A stretch of 63,817 bases of DNA, filler included, from Choristocarpus tenellus KU-1152 (taxonomy: Eukaryota; Protista; Phaeophyceae): NCBI GenBank assembly GCA_964200185.2. It is 7 parts of 7 records of this genome, joined end to end, with 100 filler letters (N's around TTAATTAATTAA, not from the genome) between each part and the next. Parts side by side here need not be neighbours in the genome. Positions count along the whole stretch, not along the records: positions 52,947 to 61,198 come from CAXNAD020004934.1; 6 more parts are not named here. The stretch is one strand, 5' to 3'. The first letter of the stretch is position 1; every line of letters begins with the position of its first letter. Position numbers and translations under genes: made by a program. The notes beneath the pieces are model-generated. The model was not told the origin of the DNA and did no database searches. It was given only the letters and a program-made list of their open reading frames with translations. Below, piece by piece: positions 3,055-60,300 of this stretch.

Positions 3055-5703
3055 CCGTCTTGCCCGGTGATTCTCTTCGCCACCCTTGCCTGAGTGAACC
3101 ACGCCGTCACAGAATCACACGATTCACACGAGCAATCAATGATATTATTAGCACTACTTCTAATCTATGTAGTAGCTGCTGTTGTTGGGTTTCCTAGTGA
3201 TCTTGTGTGACCTCTGTCTGGCGCGCTCAACAATTCTAAGCAAATATTACCCTTATCTTATTTACCTGTCGTCAGCAATAGTTTCTACCAGCAACCATTT
3301 GTGGACATAAGATCTGAACTAGAAATGGGTCTGGAGATCTGGATCCAAAATAAGAGGACTTACCGCCGTTAGCAGTATGTACAACAGACCATACTCGGCT
3401 GAACAAATAGGGCGAGACAAACAAACGTAATAATTACTAGAGCTCTGCTACAGTACTCTTGAAGCACATCAGTGACTAAGATTCTAGCCTCAACGCAGAA
3501 GGAGATGTAAGGGGCTGATTTGCAGTGCATTGTTTCTCGGTGAACCTTTATTATAAAATAGCAACAACGAATACTGACACCAGTCCAATTCTCCATCTAT
3601 TTGGCTGTAGACTTTGAGGATAACAAGGAATGAGTAATGTGTGTGATGACACACAGCGGTTACAAATGCCGCGCGATAATCAAGAAAGGTAGGTAGGTAT
3701 CCATGACAAGTTTTGTCCATAGCAATAGTCTATACTATCAGAAGAAAGTTCAAGAATTACTTGTCATCCTGGTCAGAATAGGGGCCACGAAGGAGAGTGC
3801 AGCGAGTCTGTGCAGAGATACATGGCCAGAGGTTCATTTTTAACCTGGGCAACTGATACGTTACTTACCTACCCAGTTGTACTTCGAACATTGGATCTGT
3901 ACCAATATCTAGCTCTCAGGTGTGATGGAGGCATAGGAGTTTGCTCCTTGTCTATCGATGGTACAGCAACCATGAGTTAAGCTCTGAACAAAACACCTCA
4001 ACTACCCGCTTCTCAAAGTAAAACTCTCCCTTCTCATATTGTGAATTTTCCTGTACGTTCCAATCTCGTAGGCGACCAGAATGTCACCTCGCCTCTAATC
4101 TATTAATTATTTGTAACTGAATGGTCGAATCGCCTCTCACTGTTCTGACCATGTCTAAGGCTAGAATGTGAGACGTCTCTATGCTCGTGTCAAAAGTAAA
4201 CGAAGAGATAAAAGCACCAAAGCTGTTGTATACTGCACTACCTCTTTTATGTGCAGTGTATTGGAAACTCGAATGTAATCCTACAAAAAAAAGTCCTATA
4301 CACATTAATACATGAAGAGTTGTCAATACATGTTCACCCTTCATCTCTCAGGGAAAAGAGGGGCACAAAGCGCAGACCTCTGGACCGAAGTATCAATAGA
4401 TTTTCCGTTGTTTGTTCGCTGTGGTCACAGACAGAGAAGTTCTTCTTCAATACTGCAACAAAACTTCTTCCTACCTTCACGTGTGAGGAGAGCAAAATTA
4501 AAAAAGCATATATAGAGGAGGTAAAGGAAATGACTAAAATATAGTTGTCGCCCAACATGTATGGCAATCCTGGAAGAGCAAATTAAGTTGATACAAAACT
4601 TAACAAATATAATTTTCAAGAGATGTGGCCATGGACAGATTTTGTTCAGGCGTTTGAGGGGTGTGCTCACTTGTCCTGTAACCAAAATTCCCTTGTACAT
4701 TAGCCTATGTTGGTCATCTTATATAGAAAGGAGAGGGATAACAACTGCATGAAGGACATGGTGTGACATGAACACAAATAGGCTAGAATCAGTATGTGGT
4801 ACTGAACATCGCAACAAAAAGCCCAGATTAAAATACTGTGATAATACATTACACTTCTTTCGACTTCAAAAGGATAAAATCAACTTCCTCCTTTGCGACT
4901 AAGATAGGAATTCTCTACAACCTGCAAGATTCAGCCATACAGATTTGTCATTGATATGTACGCATCCACACAGCACATGAAGTAAGTCGTGAAAAAAAGC
5001 GCGTGCATTGCTTCTTGGCTGTGTAGAGGCGGAAAGAAACAGGAGGAATGGATACCTAATTATCCTGGGACGCCCAGGTACTCTTTGCGTCCAGCACATG
5101 TTCACTTCAGACATTTTGAAATAATGGTCTTGTTTCTCCCTTGTTAACCGCTGCAGTACTCCAATTCTATGCATGATATACGAGTACGATATAACCTAAC
5201 CACAAGTGTCACTGTCACCTAGAGTCCTATGGGGCATGAACAATAATCTCATGTGATTCTGATCACCATTTCAATCTCGACATGCACTACTACTACCAAT
5301 GATGCTGAGGTTACGACAATAAAGAAGTAATGATGGGTGCCTTAATTCATCAGAAAATGCATTCTACTTCAACTTCGAAGTATTAAAATGTACAGTACAC
5401 GCATACATATACACACTTCCAACCACAACATGTCAGAGTATTTACACAACAATATGATCCCAAGTAAGGATGCTGGAACGACCACCAACCAACAAAGACA
5501 GAGATAGATAATATGTATCCCTCTCCATCCTGTCATCGATAGTGTTTGCTAAATAAGAATATGAGTGAGTACCAGTACAATCAAGACAGAATCACTGTAC
5601 CCTTCCCTGGGGTATCTTGAGGTGAGCCCTCGATCTCCCTCTTCTTTTGTTGTACTCTGGAGTAATACAAACACAGTACCTACCGCCCCCGGCTAACACT
5701 CAC

Positions 5704-54796: not shown

Positions 54797-56022
54797 CTCA
54801 CCCTTCAAGGGGTTGGAGGGCGGAGAATATGTCAAGAGGCCGTCACAGTTGCTATACACATAGAGGACAGAAAAAATGTCATTTGTGGAATTTTTTGTTT
54901 AGTTTTTTTCCATTTTACCCTCTGCAGTTGGAAGTACGGGAGTACAGTCAACTGTGCTGTGGTTAGCAAGGGCTGGTGTGCAAGATGGTCTTTAAACGAG
55001 GGGTATTATCGAGAATGAAAAACTTGGTGTGGACTCAAGGCGATTTTCAGCAAGGGAAAAACATTGCAATTTTTCTGCTCTTGCCTCCTTTCCATACTAG
55101 AAAGGTCAACCCTGTCTCTTCCTCTGCAGTGCAGACTTATCATTTTGGAATTTGTGCATGAAAGGTCTCTAGTGATGCCTTTCCTGTTAGACTACTTGCT
55201 CCAGCAAACCAGCCTCCTGGTTATCGCAACACCCGTAAGTACTCACTCGCGAGCTTTCTCTATTTATATGCTGAAGTGTCCTTTTCTGGAATGTGCTCCT
55301 TATCTAGTTAGGTGGTATTCCAGTACTTCACATTCACTTTGGCTGGAGGTTCATCCCCTGTTTACAATGCCATGAGTTGTCTTGGTCTCAGAAATGACAT
55401 TGGATTTATGTGCAAATTCAAACTTTTTTTCCCACATTCAAAATTTTTACACATTGCAATTAGAATGAAACTGTACTGTATGTCCTTTCTGTCCAGAAAT
55501 ATTGTTGATACGGTTCTCATGTGCTTTAATTAAGTACAGGAGGATAACCCAATACACAGAATGATCCAAGTGTTGCTAGTCTTGTCCACCTCATTGGAAT
55601 GGTTCCGGTTTCAAAATAAAGAGAGCATACTGAAAACTGTCACCCCCTACTCAGTAAACTCAATCTTAGTTCAATCAAATTTCGCATCACTCTTGCCCAT
55701 AAAAGATAGGTACAATGAGGGCACCTCTCCTTGACATGTGCAGGTGTGTACTTACCATTGCCGTCTTACCTTTCATTGAAAGGGCTTGAGTTGACTGTTA
55801 AATGCTCATTTTGTTGCCGTAATTGAAGCCTTCTAAGCGATCAAGAGTAGCATGTGCATAATACTGTGGTTTCCTTGTACTCCCTACTATCCATAGGTAA
55901 ACATCTGCCATCACTGCGTACGTTTGAGGAGATAGCAAACAGAGATGGCGCGTAGATCTCTGAGGATGAGACGAAAATGTGTGCACAAAAGACAGAACTT
56001 TCCTACGGCATCGCCGTATTGT

Positions 56023-57085
56023 TTACCCAGCTGTTGCCTCTCGAAACTGCCACTCCTGTCGACACAACGGGCACTGGTGTGGCCGGTTCTGCTGTGTCGC
56101 AAACTGCAGATGCTTCAAAACACAGTGCATGTGAAATGTGTGATTACACTGCCCCCATACTGTATCATAAGGCAACCAAGGGAGGGAGGGCGGGGGTGGT
56201 GGGGAAGGGAACGGTAAGAGCAGCTCACAGCAGAGTGGATATTTGGTCTGGCATTCCAAAAGCACCATTCCTTTCGAGGAGGTGGAGGTGGCATTTGGGG
56301 TGGCATTTGAAGGATGCCTGAGTGAGAAAGGGGGTATTAACTTAATTTTCAACATAGAACTGATCATAGGTGTGTCAAACATATGGGGGTATCGTTGGGT
56401 ATCCACAGTCGTTACACCATTTTAGCTATAGTACTACCATAAGCTTGACTTGCGGTGGCTAAGTGAAGGAACAAAAGAGTTGTAAGAACCGAAATAAAAG
56501 GTTGAAACTCCGCAATAAGCGACATCAACAATGAACGATGGGATTAATGGGAGTTTGAGAGGAAACTAAAAATGAAGAAAGATGATCAGTGTCTCAAGCC
56601 CAATCATGGTGATCAAGTCTTAGTTGTGCCAAAGATCGAGTCTCACCAGGGGAGCAGCTATCACCAGGGACGGTACAATCGGGACAGCATGCATCGAATG
56701 CCAGGCGGCAGATTCCACATACGTCATCGTTGACATCCCATTTCCACACTGCCACGCCGTGCCACCTACGACATTGGAGATAGTCAGGAACTGGAAGGGT
56801 GAACGATTGCTGGAGAAAATAAGAGTGAGAGGCACATAAAACCCCAGCAATCAACCATGGGTATCACAGTAAGGTGCTCAACCCTCGGCTTTGCTTCTCT
56901 CGTTCCGAGCTCTTCGTCATCGCCTACCCTGGGCGATAGTTGCACGTGAAGGAGAGGCACGGGATGTCGGTTTGGTTAGAAGGCCAATGGTCACGGTGAT
57001 AGATCAAACCTAGATGCCATTACGGTGAGGATGTATGTAACGTGGGGGTATGCTCCAAGCGCTCACTTATGATCTTGACCTTCAT
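56023..57085 (-). CDS. APC11: Anaphase-promoting complex subunit 11 (RING-H2), 91 aa
   Basis: Exons 57085-57067, 56928 (1 nt), 56765-56647, 56159-56023 give MKVKIIRWHGVAVWKWDVNDDVCGICRLAFDACCPDCTVPGDSCSPVWGQCNHTFHMHCVLKHLQFATQQNRPHQCPLCRQEWQFREATAG*, with classic APC11 motifs. Confidence 0.95.
56928..56928 (-). CDS. APC11: Predicted single-nucleotide exon (G) of APC11
   Basis: Minus-strand context ttctaacc...cctctccttcacgtgcaactatcgcccAG|G|GTaggc; resolves the phase-1 donor / phase-2 acceptor mismatch (A+G+G = Arg7). Confidence 0.8.
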
Positions 57086-57371
57086 CTTTAGACCTGTGTT
57101 GGAGGTTGAGGGTGGAAAGATATGTCACAGGAGTGGTTGTTCTCCTTTCTCGTCAAGTCTGTGGTTTTCCTAGATTTACACATAGAACCTGACAATAACA
57201 ATGATACATATAGGAGTACTATATAGTCCAGATAGTAAGTAGTATTGTAGGTCATTAGTTATTATTATTAGTATTGTAGGTAGGTCATTAGTTGGACTTA
57301 TTGCATGTATTTGGAAAAAAATCAAACCGAAAAATTGTCAATAGAAAACAGGTATAGTTCAACCTCTGCCA
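57086..57371. promoter_or_regulatory. Probable bidirectional promoter between APC11 and the quinone oxidoreductase gene
   Basis: Only 286 bp between divergent ATGs; AT-rich, with a duplicated TAGTATTGTAGGT..CATTAGTT motif. Confidence 0.55.
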
Positions 57372-60300
57372 ATGCCAGGTCGTCAATGGAATCCTGGTCT
57401 GGCATGGGCCTTCAAGTCACTCAATCGATTGACAAGCTTAGTCCCCCCACCACCCAGTTCCACCCGTGATCGGGTACTAGTTGTCCAAGTTCACCCTTAC
57501 GGCAAAGGTCCGTGTTTCACCTCCGCCATTGGGAATGCTGTGTGTGAGTCCCTCAACGCAGCAGGTGAGAGGGGAATGGGAAGGCATGGGTACAATTTAT
57601 TCGTTAGGGAACCCTACTCTATACCCACTATACTGCCTAAGAACATTTATAAAAAACAGCATTCTAAACATTAGCGCTGAGACAGCAAATGATATTTCCC
57701 CATCTTGGTCAACTTTGTCCATCATATGACCAAAGCGTTGTTGCAAGAAGATGCCAAGGGGGATATTACCCGTATTTACGATTTTTCTGATTGATTGGAG
57801 AAAAAGAAGTCATTCCTCCGACTAAGTTACTCCCAAAGCAGTTGGTTGAAGGATACTAAACCCCCTGTTTCCTAGGTGGAGGTTCCTTGATCTCTTTTTA
57901 TCTTATCCATTAACTCGCGTAGGGGTATACGAATACCGAACAGGAGACTCATGGGTGCAGTTGGTGGGATACTGAACATGAACCGCAGAACACGTACTGA
58001 GGAGTAATGAGGTTGACCTGGAGAAGTCGCGCCTGGCAGAATCGAGAGTTTCTTTTGATGACAGTCACAGTAGTTGCACAGTACGAAGGAGTACCACAAC
58101 TTCTACCTCGTATGACTTATCCACTCTGAGATTTGTAGTCGACTATGGAGCCATTATCCCAAGCAACCAAAGTAAATTTAGCGCAAATCTCTCGTACTGC
58201 GGAACATTCCCTCACTTCTGCCCTGACTACTCTTGTTCTCTCCATTTTGATGTTGTACACCATCAGGACATGAAGTCCGACTTAGGAACTTGTACGAGGA
58301 TGGTTTTGATCCGGTATTGACAAAGGACGAACTGCGGGAATACCTGACCGTATACAGGGACGATAAATTATCAACTGACATTAGCAATCACGTCCAGGAC
58401 TTGCAGTGGTGCTCTGGACTGGTTCTTGTTTACCCCACCTGGTGGTACTCCTTCCCAGCTGTATTAAAGGTGAGGTGCAGGTTTTGTCATGTTATGTATA
58501 GCAAGGAGGTGGGTGGATGGGTGGGTGGGAAGGGGTTGTATGTGTTGTTGGTGGAGGTAATCTTATGTTGTGCCACATTACCATCATCATACGGTGCAGT
58601 GGGCAGTGCTCAGGCTAGGTGTATTTGCTTGTACTTCCACATATTTCAGTATGTGTGAACTTTTCCCAGAGATCAACAACACACCATTTGCTTATTGAAG
58701 ATGCAAGTTCTAGGTGAACTTCCTAATCAGTCTTCAACCCACTTTTCATAAATGCAAGTTACCATGAAAGTATAGCGGGATACGTTGTACCCTGTAAGCA
58801 ACTACTGTTTGGAACAACCCTTGTCTCTTTGGTGATCCAGCAGTGTAGGCTAGTAATCACATAATCTGGGAACGAACTTCTCAGGAACGCAAAATCCCAC
58901 CATCCCTCAGGTTAGGGACAGCACGATTTCTACCTATTTCTTGATGCCGCACTACATTTGCTTCGCTGGATAATCTGCAGTTTGTGTTCAATGGTGGTCT
59001 CGCCCCCTTATATCATGAAAGTGTGCATGATATATTGCAACATGGAACTTGGCGCCCTGCGACTCTTGAAGTTGTAGATATTCACACTCTTAGTTTGTTG
59101 TTCAGGCATGGTGTGGTGTGGAAACCCATGCTATCCACAGTGGAACCTACTCACTGCATTAAAACATGCATGACTCTCTACTCCTCCTGAAATGGGACTG
59201 TATTAAAATGGTCGATCGTTCCATGCACACTTCAGCTCAACATTCATTCACGTCAGCAAGGCTGAGTTAATGTGTTCGAACTATTTTTCCTGTATAGCAA
59301 CCTGATTTCGATATCCGCAGGCCCATGCCAATCTCCTCTCCTTCTGACCCCCTTGACTGAAACGTTCTACTGACAGGGTTGGTTTGATAGGACGTTTTTG
59401 CCTGGGGTGGCATTTGATCTTCCAAACGGGACTGAAAAACCAAACCCCCAAACTGGCCTCGGAAGTCGGCTCACCAACATCACCAAGGTGGGTAAATATC
59501 ATGAATGCACCACTGGGGTAGATTTTTAGTAGCATAGATTTGACAAAAGAGCTGCACATGTAGTTCTACCTTTCAATGGCGCTAGAGTAAGATAGAATTC
59601 TTCTGCCAAGGTCGGTCTGATTGTAGCACTTGTGTTGATACGCTGGTGTTGTGTTTCTTGACTAGGAGGAGTGCAATTGTGACTCCATCAAGTGAGTGCT
59701 GTTGCAACTCCACATATGCTAATTTTGCCTTTTGGTGTTGTTGTGGAGCATGAGGTAAGCAAGCTAAGAGCCAATGAGTAAGCAAGTCTGAACAGCTATC
59801 AGTCTCCAGCTCCACAGTAGTTCTTTGTTTGCTGAGCATGAATGCAAATTGCTGCAAACAAGGAGCCTAGTGATGCTGTACTGAGTGCTTCAAAGTATGT
59901 TATTGGCTCTGAGGTTGGCAGCATTTGCTTGAGTCCTTCCCAAAATCGAAGCTGCTGTTGAGGAGGGCAATGTTATGGTGTACTCAACGCTCTTTTGAAA
60001 TTTGTTTAAGCTGAACTGTTTGGGGACTAAAATATCTAAGAAAGCTACAAGCTACACAATAGTACGATGCCCTCAAACTAGAGGTGTGTTAAAAGGATAT
60101 ATCGCAAGCTACGGAGATCCAACTTCTTCAGCGCCAGTCCAACCAACTCATTGTCTATTGTACCCACCCTGACCCCCTTCCCTGCCCCCCTTCCCTGCCC
60201 CCCTTCCCTGCCCCAATTCTGTCACTGATTTGTACGTTCTATGTCTCCTCGATGACTGCCCTTCTGTTCACCTATGATGGATGGATTCTTGCTGATGTTT

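What the first reader, a model, noticed from the sequence alone, without database searches (positions are those of the whole stretch)
56765..57085. Single-nucleotide exon in APC11 of a probable stramenopile
Seen: exon 1 is 19 nt (ATG AAG GTC AAG ATC ATA A|gtgagc, phase 1), but the next conserved exon starts cgtag|G TGG CAC (phase 2), so direct splicing frameshifts the gene. Midway through the intervening 301 nt lie a branch-like TTCTAAC, a pyrimidine tract and CCCAG|G|GTAGGC. Including this one G (56928) splits the region into GT-AG introns of 138 and 162 nt and makes codon 7 A|G|G = Arg, giving the canonical MKVKIIRWH start. Known: a 1-nt exon has been reported in Arabidopsis APC11 (Guo and Liu 2015), as I recall in the middle of the same codon 7. 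Inference: either the smallest possible exon is conserved across eukaryotic supergroups or it arose convergently at the same codon. Skipping it would give a frameshifted transcript, a potential splicing switch on the catalytic APC/C subunit. Automatic annotation would be expected to miss it.
Basis: partly seen in the sequence, partly recalled or inferred. Interest (0 to 1): 0.92.

Follow-up and report, generated by a model that had tools for sequence, protein, structure and literature searches.

The report
One-base exon in brown-alga APC11
The APC11 cell-cycle gene of the brown alga Choristocarpus tenellus makes an mRNA with one extra G, best explained by a single-nucleotide exon at the same codon position as the one known in land plants, so this oddity is either very old or arose more than once.

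Summary
Confirmed. The piece is a Choristocarpus tenellus (brown alga) contig with APC11 on the minus strand.

Gene layout:
- Exon 1 has 19 coding nt (57085-57067).
- Exon 2 starts at 56765 in the wrong phase for a direct join.
- AG|G|GT lies at 56928, giving GT-AG introns of 138 and 162 nt.

Evidence:
- An RNA-like contig from the same study skips 300 nt, not 301, between exon 1 and exon 2. The mRNA therefore reads ...ATCATAAG GTGGCAC (MKVKIIRWH).
- This rules out the upstream-acceptor model as the main form. Two DNA-like runs show no indel, which rules out an assembly error.
- The extra G alone cannot separate a 1-nt exon from a single TG-AG or GT-TA intron. However, a pyrimidine tract followed by CAG|G|GTRRG recurs inside otherwise unalignable introns of Ectocarpus, Ascophyllum and other brown-alga loci. 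It is the top-scoring AG|N|GT in all five complete loci.
- Land-plant APC11 has its 1-nt exon at the identical CDS position, nt 20.

Relatives:
- Tribonema has only the phase-2 intron.
- A diatom-like locus has only the phase-1 intron.
- A coral-like locus may have both.

No splicing switch is shown. This is a new member of a known kind, and public annotations miss it.

The parts
57067..57085 (-). Coding part of exon 1 (19 nt, MKVKII plus the first base of codon 7). The transcript contig reaches at least 57095.
   Evidence: Sequence. The RNA-like contig covers 57066-57095. The same 19-nt exon 1 ending in A|gtgag is found in Ectocarpus, L005, L006 and Ascophyllum.
56929..57066 (-). Intron 1a, 138 nt, GT-AG, phase 1. 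Holds a branch-like TTCTAAC at 56981-56975 and a pyrimidine-rich tail.
   Evidence: Absent from the RNA-like contig.
56928..56928 (-). Proposed single-nucleotide exon, G, the middle base of codon 7 (A|G|G = Arg).
   Evidence: The mRNA carries one extra G. CAG|G|GTRRG is invariant in six aligned brown-alga loci. It is the best AG|N|GT by splice-site matrices built from other introns. Shuffle test.
56766..56927 (-). Intron 1b, 162 nt, GT-AG (gtaggc...cgtag), phase 2. CTGAC branch-like site 19 nt before the acceptor.
   Evidence: Absent from the RNA-like contig. The same intron position occurs in Tribonema and L013.
56647..56765 (-). Exon 2, 119 nt (last base of codon 7, then WHGVAVWKWDVNDDVCGICRLAFDACCPDCTVPGDSCSP, plus 1 base).
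   Evidence: The RNA-like contig covers exactly 56647-56765. Translation. Pfam zf-ANAPC11 E 1.5e-10.
56160..56646 (-). Intron 2, 487 nt, GT-AG.
   Evidence: Joint in the RNA-like contig. The NCBI model places a false 14-aa exon inside it.
56023..56159 (-). Coding part of exon 3 (137 nt including stop TAA at 56025-56023). The transcript runs on past 55300.
   Evidence: Pfam zf-ANAPC11 E 7.3e-11.
56883..56883 (-). Second AG|G|GT, an alternative source of the G that is disfavoured.
   Evidence: Purine-rich upstream tract and gttgag donor. Scores 14 bits below 56928.
56790..56792 (-). Rival upstream acceptor: AG at 56792-56791, with 56790 the first base of the extended exon (in-frame 9-aa insertion). 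Not used in the assembled transcript.
   Evidence: Sequence. No such joint.

Best explanation

Shown:
- The mature mRNA has one G between the 19-nt coding part of exon 1 and exon 2.
- That G restores the frame and makes codon 7 AGG (Arg).
- The product is a 91-aa protein starting MKVKIIRWH.

Inferred: the G is the base at 56928, a one-nucleotide exon bounded by a normal 3' splice site (pyrimidine tract, CAG) and a normal 5' splice site (GTAGGC). Two ordinary GT-AG introns of 138 and 162 nt are removed instead of one.

Inferred mechanism: a spliceosome cannot sit on both sides of a 1-nt exon at once, so the two introns are most likely removed one after the other, as at a recursive splice site. 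Removing intron 1a first would create ATAAG|GTAGGC. This fits the 5' splice-site consensus (AAG|GT) better than the unspliced AGG|GT. All brown-alga exon 1 copies end in AA, so this regenerated site is general.

The arrangement is shared by brown algae from the earliest-branching order to Ectocarpales and Fucales.
For: 1. RNA: one contig of run X3 (depth 760, against 5-7 for intron pieces) covers 55300-56159, 56647-56765 and 57066-57095.
- It has skips of 487 nt (GT..AG) and 300 nt, no other letters, and nothing between the sides. A direct GT-AG join would skip 301.
- DNA-like runs X1 and X2 show no joint and no indel.

2. No placement of the 300-nt skip is canonical. The three allowed placements are TG..AG, GT..TA and AG..GT (sequence).

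3. Relatives: exon 1 is 19 nt and the exon 2 acceptor is phase 2 in Ectocarpus siliculosus, Ascophyllum nodosum, L005 and L006.
- Each has Y-tract-CAG|G|GTGAG in the gap.
- L002, L008 and L009 show the same motif upstream of exon 2.
- The 9-nt core is invariant in an alignment whose flanks do not align between lineages. Exon 2 is only 76-96% identical between these loci at DNA level.

4. Chance of YAGGGTRRG behind a Y-tract is 0.2-0.9% per locus.

5. With matrices built only from other introns of these genes, the top AG|N|GT (any N) in all 5 complete loci is the proposed one, and N is always G.

6. Cladosiphon and Nemacystus gene models read MKVTVKRWHG.

7. Precedent at the same CDS position in land plants:
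- blocks 19,1,52, phase 1;
- 19-nt primer and cag|A|gtaggt context;
- the Arabidopsis A-to-G mutant CAG|G|GTAGGT is spliced correctly;
- seen directly in L069 and in the moss-like pair L021/L020, where the extra base is A and cannot come from a splice-site slip.
Against: - The inserted base is G, and both the intron's first base and the acceptor's last base are G. The mRNA alone therefore fits a single non-canonical 300-nt intron equally well.
- No partly spliced intermediate or lariat was seen. X3 has no contig in 56812-57063.
- The RNA evidence is one assembled contig with only 30 nt on the exon 1 side, from a run whose type is not on record.
- The Choristocarpus donor GTAGGC is weaker than the GTGAG of other brown algae. 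Its combined score is only +1.9 bits.
- In L004 and L007 no motif was found in the 1.1-1.6 kb available, and exon 1 is not on those contigs either.
Confidence: 0.85

Rival explanations
1. A single 300-nt intron with non-canonical ends (TG-AG, using the base after the GT as cut site, or GT-TA). The extra G would be the first intron base or the last acceptor base, and the intronic AGGGT would be irrelevant.
For: The joint can be placed in three registers, all giving the same mRNA. G is exactly what a 1-nt slip at either splice site would add, in Choristocarpus and in Ectocarpus alike.
Against: It does not explain a Y-tract-CAG|G|GTRRG kept in five or more diverged brown-alga introns. All other introns seen in these genes are GT-AG. 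In land plants the same position carries A, which no slip can give.
Confidence: 0.08
2. A 1-nt exon, but at the other AG|G|GT (56883), giving introns of 183 and 117 nt.
For: AGGGT is present there. The mRNA would be identical.
Against: The upstream 20 nt are purine-rich and the donor is GTTGAG. It scores -12.3 bits against +1.9 for 56928. There is no counterpart in L005.
Confidence: 0.03
3. The main mRNA uses the upstream acceptor at 56791/56790 (in-frame, nine extra residues). Alternatively, the genome assembly lacks a base in exon 1.
For: The upstream acceptor keeps the frame with one GT-AG intron. Contigs cannot exclude rare isoforms.
Against: The only transcript contig joins 57066 to 56765. 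Contigs of two DNA-like samples equal the window with no indel. The same 19-nt exon 1 recurs in four other brown-alga genomes.
Confidence: 0.02

Closest known systems
Single-nucleotide exon of land-plant APC11 (Guo and Liu 2015, PMC4674806; Yu et al. 2022, PMC8831610, cluster 1 zf-ANAPC11)
   Same: - Same gene.
- Same 19-nt coding exon 1.
- Same position, CDS nt 20, the middle base of codon 7 before the conserved Trp.
- Same flanking phases, 1 and 2.
- AG|N|GT context. The experimentally spliced Arabidopsis A-to-G mutant reads CAG|G|GTAGGT, almost the Choristocarpus site.
- Also missed by annotation.
   Different: - The base is G (Arg, A|G|G or A|G|A) instead of A (Gln or Lys).
- The host is a stramenopile, not a plant.
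- Because the base is G, the mRNA alone does not prove the exon.
- No mutational test exists.
- Common descent is not shown: Tribonema and L013 carry only the phase-2 intron.
Other reported 1-nt exons: plant VPS55 (PMC8831610) and Fusarium CYP621A (PMC12940212)
   Same: One base is needed to keep the frame. It is flanked by AG and GT, conserved among relatives and supported by transcript reads.
   Different: Different genes and positions, so there is no bearing on APC11 ancestry.
Recursive splice sites (ratchet points) of long Drosophila and vertebrate introns, cited in PMC4674806
   Same: A juxtaposed 3' and 5' splice site, (Y)n-CAG|GT.... Stepwise removal regenerates a 5' splice site after the first step.
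   Different: Ratchet points leave zero nucleotides and serve very long introns. Here one base stays in the mRNA and the introns are short (138 and 162 nt). The stepwise order is inferred, not observed.

Membership tests
APC11 / ANAPC11 RING-H2 subunit | zf-ANAPC11 RING-H2 domain and the MKVKI...W N-terminus | tested here: met
   Pfam PF12861 on exon 2 (E 1.5e-10) and exon 3 (E 7.3e-11), searched separately. 95-100% identity to brown-alga APC11.
Single-nucleotide exon (APC11 type) | The mature mRNA holds one base that is not collinear with the flanking exons and is needed for the frame | tested here: met
   300-nt skip instead of 301 in the RNA-like contig, absent from the DNA-like runs. Without it the frame stops after 60 codons.
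Single-nucleotide exon (APC11 type) | That base lies inside the gap, preceded by AG with a pyrimidine tract and followed by GT | tested here: met
   cccAG|G|GTaggc at 56928, with 68% pyrimidines in the 22 nt before the CAG and TTCTAAC upstream.
Single-nucleotide exon (APC11 type) | The site is conserved in relatives whose introns are otherwise diverged | tested here: met
   CAG|G|GTRRG in Ectocarpus, Ascophyllum, L005, L006, L002, L008 and L009. Top-scoring site in 5 of 5 complete loci.
Single-nucleotide exon (APC11 type) | Changing or deleting the base changes the mRNA accordingly (the Guo and Liu test), or intermediates map it | not testable with these tools
   Only assembled contigs were available, and none lies in 56812-57063 in X3.
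Same position as the land-plant APC11 microexon | CDS nt 20, phase 1 upstream and phase 2 downstream | tested here: met
   Blocks 19,1,52 phase 1. The 19-nt APC11-F primer. L069 has a 19-nt exon 1 with A at +333 of a 422-nt gap, as published.
Homologue by descent of the plant microexon | Both flanking introns inherited from a common ancestor | tested here: inconclusive
   - Phase-2 only: Tribonema, L013, L016-18.
- Phase-1 only: L012 and insect-like loci.
- Both: plants, brown algae, coral-like L085 and L037.
- None: Phytophthora.
. The taxonomy of the metagenome loci is not established.

The most novel reading that the evidence does not exclude
The one-base exon may be ancestral rather than convergent. 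Both introns around the middle base of APC11 codon 7 would then date from before the split of plants, stramenopiles and animals.
- The pair would survive in land plants, in all sampled brown algae and perhaps in corals. L085 has a 19-nt exon 1, a single AG|A|GTGAGT in the gap, and a phase-2 acceptor.
- Other lineages would have lost one intron (Tribonema: phase 2 left; a diatom-like alga and insects: phase 1 left) or both (oomycetes, monocots).
Probability: 0.4. Interest if true: 0.85.

Novelty: new member of a known kind. Interest (0 to 1): 0.72.

Why it matters
- Exons of one base are the lower limit of what a spliceosome can define. The paper library turned up only two plant genes and one fungal gene with one.
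- Finding the APC11 case again, at the identical base, in a second eukaryotic supergroup and across the brown algae shows it is stable over very long times.
- This gives a concrete test case for two questions. How are adjacent 3' and 5' splice sites used in turn? Can two introns one base apart be as old as the eukaryotic ancestor?
- In practice, every Phaeoexplorer-type and Ectocarpus model seen here has a wrong N-terminus for an essential cell-cycle enzyme. The same fault appears in coral and termite models.

Tried and rejected
- The look-up of sequencing runs listed no run on record as RNA. X3 nevertheless behaves as RNA, so it was used, with that caveat.
- A second protein search with the exon 3 part gave only 4 hits and no new named outgroup.
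- Exon 1 could not be found on L002, L004, L007, L008 and L009. Their contigs probably end before it, so the motifs in L002, L008 and L009 are only consistent, not complete cases.
- Bad N-termini in coral and termite annotations are not evidence for a microexon. A 19-nt first coding exon alone causes them.
Contigs cannot show a skipped isoform.
- A literature search found no report of a 1-nt exon in brown algae.
Exons were searched apart by reference. A script joined them only to count length and find the first stop of the skipped form.
- Vertebrate-like hits were not followed.

Full report
**Observation**

On the minus strand the piece carries a three-part APC11 reading frame.
- ATG at 57085, then 19 coding nt to 57067, followed by gtgagc.
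- cgtag|G TGG CAC at 56765, running to 56647.
- cag|TA TGG GGG at 56159, running to the stop at 56025-56023.

Exon 1 ends in phase 1 and exon 2 begins in phase 2, so a direct join shifts the frame. The first stop then comes after 60 codons. The 301-nt gap holds AG|G|GT at 56928, which splits it into GT-AG introns of 138 and 162 nt. TTCTAAC lies at 56981-56975. A second, poor AG|G|GT lies at 56883.

**Organism and annotation**

The 100%-identical database protein P0003 sits on a contig of 8252 nt, exactly the length of this piece. It is NCBI CAM9518597.1, 'unnamed protein product, partial [Choristocarpus tenellus]'. This is a brown alga of the earliest-branching order (that placement is my own knowledge). 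The model lacks exon 1 and places a 14-aa false exon inside intron 2. Ectocarpus, Ascophyllum and Pylaiella models also have intron-derived N-termini. Both exons match Pfam zf-ANAPC11 when searched apart.

**RNA evidence**

Three runs of one study hold the stretch. X1 and X2 give contigs identical to the window, with no indel and no joint. They behave as DNA, and X1 may be the source of the assembly.

X3 behaves as RNA.
- One contig at depth 760 covers 55300-56159, 56647-56765 and 57066-57095.
- Its skips are 487 nt (GT..AG on the gene strand) and 300 nt.
- Pieces inside intron 2 have depth 5-7.

The second skip is 300 nt, not 301, so the transcript reads ...ATCATAAG GTGGCAC. The joint can slide by two places, giving TG..AG, GT..TA or AG..GT. 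No single canonical intron fits.

This result removes the upstream-acceptor model as the main form. Together with X1, X2 and the relatives below, it also removes the missing-base idea.

Limits:
- It is one assembled contig.
- Only 30 nt lie on the exon 1 side.
- The run type is not on record.
- Contigs cannot show minor isoforms.

**One-base exon or non-canonical intron?**

The added base is G, so a 1-nt slip at the donor or the acceptor would give the same mRNA. I therefore looked at relatives.

Genomic loci were fetched for Ectocarpus siliculosus (L001), Ascophyllum nodosum (L011) and several unnamed brown-alga assemblies. In L001, L005, L006 and L011:
- Exon 1 is again 19 coding nt ending A|gtgag.
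- The exon 2 acceptor is again phase 2.
- The gap is 813 to 3877 nt.
- The gap contains a pyrimidine tract followed by CAG|G|GTGAG.

L002, L008 and L009 show the same motif upstream of exon 2, but their contigs end before exon 1.

In an alignment of six loci the core CAGGGT.. G is invariant while the flanks do not align between lineages. Exon 2 itself is only 76-96% identical in DNA between these loci.

In dinucleotide shuffles of each gap, YAGGGTRRG behind a pyrimidine tract turns up in 0.2-0.9% of trials.

I also built splice-site matrices only from the other introns of these genes. With them the best AG|N|GT, with N free, is the proposed site in all five complete loci, and N is G each time. 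In the window 56928 beats 56883 by 14 bits.

Gene models of Cladosiphon and Nemacystus read MKVTVKRWHG. A non-canonical single intron explains none of this conservation.

I put the 1-nt exon at 56928 at about 0.85.

**Likely mechanism (inferred)**

Two spliceosomes cannot define a 1-nt exon at the same time, so the introns should go one after the other, as at a recursive splice site. Removing intron 1a first turns AGG|GTAGGC into AAG|GTAGGC. In Ectocarpus it gives AAG|GTGAGT. Both are closer to the 5' splice-site consensus, and all brown-alga exon 1 copies end in AA. The order was not observed.

**Comparison with the known case**

Guo and Liu showed by mutation that Arabidopsis APC11 has a 1-nt exon, A333 in a 422-nt gap.
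- Their primer table gives a 19-nt forward primer from the ATG and the context cag|A|gtaggt.
- Their A-to-G mutant, CAG|G|GTAGGT, was spliced correctly.
- Yu et al. list the cluster as size 1, phase 1, blocks 19,1,52, 'land plants'.

I saw this directly in metagenome loci.
- L069 has the 19-nt exon 1 and A at +333 of a 422-nt gap.
- The moss-like genomic locus L021 and the spliced contig L020 differ by an extra A (MKVNILK) that no slip can supply.

So the brown-alga exon lies at the identical base of the identical codon. It is a further member of that kind, in another supergroup. I found no paper reporting it.

**Ancient or convergent?**

| State at codon 7 | Loci |
|---|---|
| Phase-2 intron only, 20-nt exon 1 | Tribonema minus, the close unnamed relative L013, L016-18, L033/34 |
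| Phase-1 intron only | Diatom-like L012, insect-like loci L049 and L090-93 |
| No intron | Phytophthora, several others |
| Both (candidate 1-nt exon) | Coral-like L085, unnamed L037 |

- L085's exon 2 peptide is closest to Pocillopora and Porites. It has a 19-nt exon 1, a phase-2 acceptor and a single AG|A|GTGAGT in the 483-nt gap, giving C|A|G.
- L037 has introns of 37 and 35 nt around AG|G|GT.

Both intron positions thus occur, singly or together, in plant, stramenopile and animal-like genes. A loss-only history from an ancestor with both introns is as economical as repeated gains one base from an existing intron. However, the metagenome loci lack firm taxonomy and RNA support. I rate the ancestral reading at about 0.4.

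**Not supported**

Nothing shows regulated skipping.

No search used the joined spliced protein. Exons were searched apart by reference.

Noticed in passing
L085:2156-2660: Coral-like APC11 on a metagenome contig. It has a 19-nt exon 1 (..AAAC|gtaagt), a single AG|A|gtgagt at 2297 in the 483-nt gap, and acceptor ttcag|G TGG. The frame needs one base, giving C|A|G Gln. This is a candidate 1-nt exon in a cnidarian-like gene. Pocillopora and Porites models have aberrant N-termini.
   Followed up: partly
L037:1311-1404: Unnamed organism with a 19-nt exon 1, then 37 nt, AG|G|gt, 35 nt, then ttag|C TGG. Two very small introns may flank a 1-nt exon (A|G|C Ser).
   Followed up: no
L003:3355-3610 (Tribonema minus): The 1208-nt first intron holds two degenerate partial copies of the start of exon 2, at about 3355-3410 and 3524-3610. 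They look like decayed exon duplications.
   Followed up: no
L012:149-245: Diatom-like APC11 (MVKVKIKR-YHG) has a 69-nt phase-1 intron in the same Arg codon (C|gtgaga..caag|GC) and no phase-2 intron.
   Followed up: partly
window 57282-57565 and 58290-58658 (+ strand): A Flavodoxin_2-type gene diverges from APC11, about 300 nt from its ATG. Its first exon is expressed in X3, with a splice at 57565. The same neighbour is present in Ectocarpus L001 and in L006, and an ATP-synt_DE_N gene lies on the other side in L001 and L004. Gene order is therefore conserved.
   Followed up: partly
window 56230-56275 (- strand): The NCBI model CAM9518597.1 inserts a 14-aa exon (GMVLLECQTKYPLC) inside what the transcript contig shows to be a single 487-nt intron.
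   Followed up: yes
window 55300-56022 (- strand): The APC11 transcript contig (1702 nt) runs at least 720 nt past the stop codon and beyond 55300. This is either a long 3' UTR or an overlap with the neighbouring gene's transcript.
   Followed up: no
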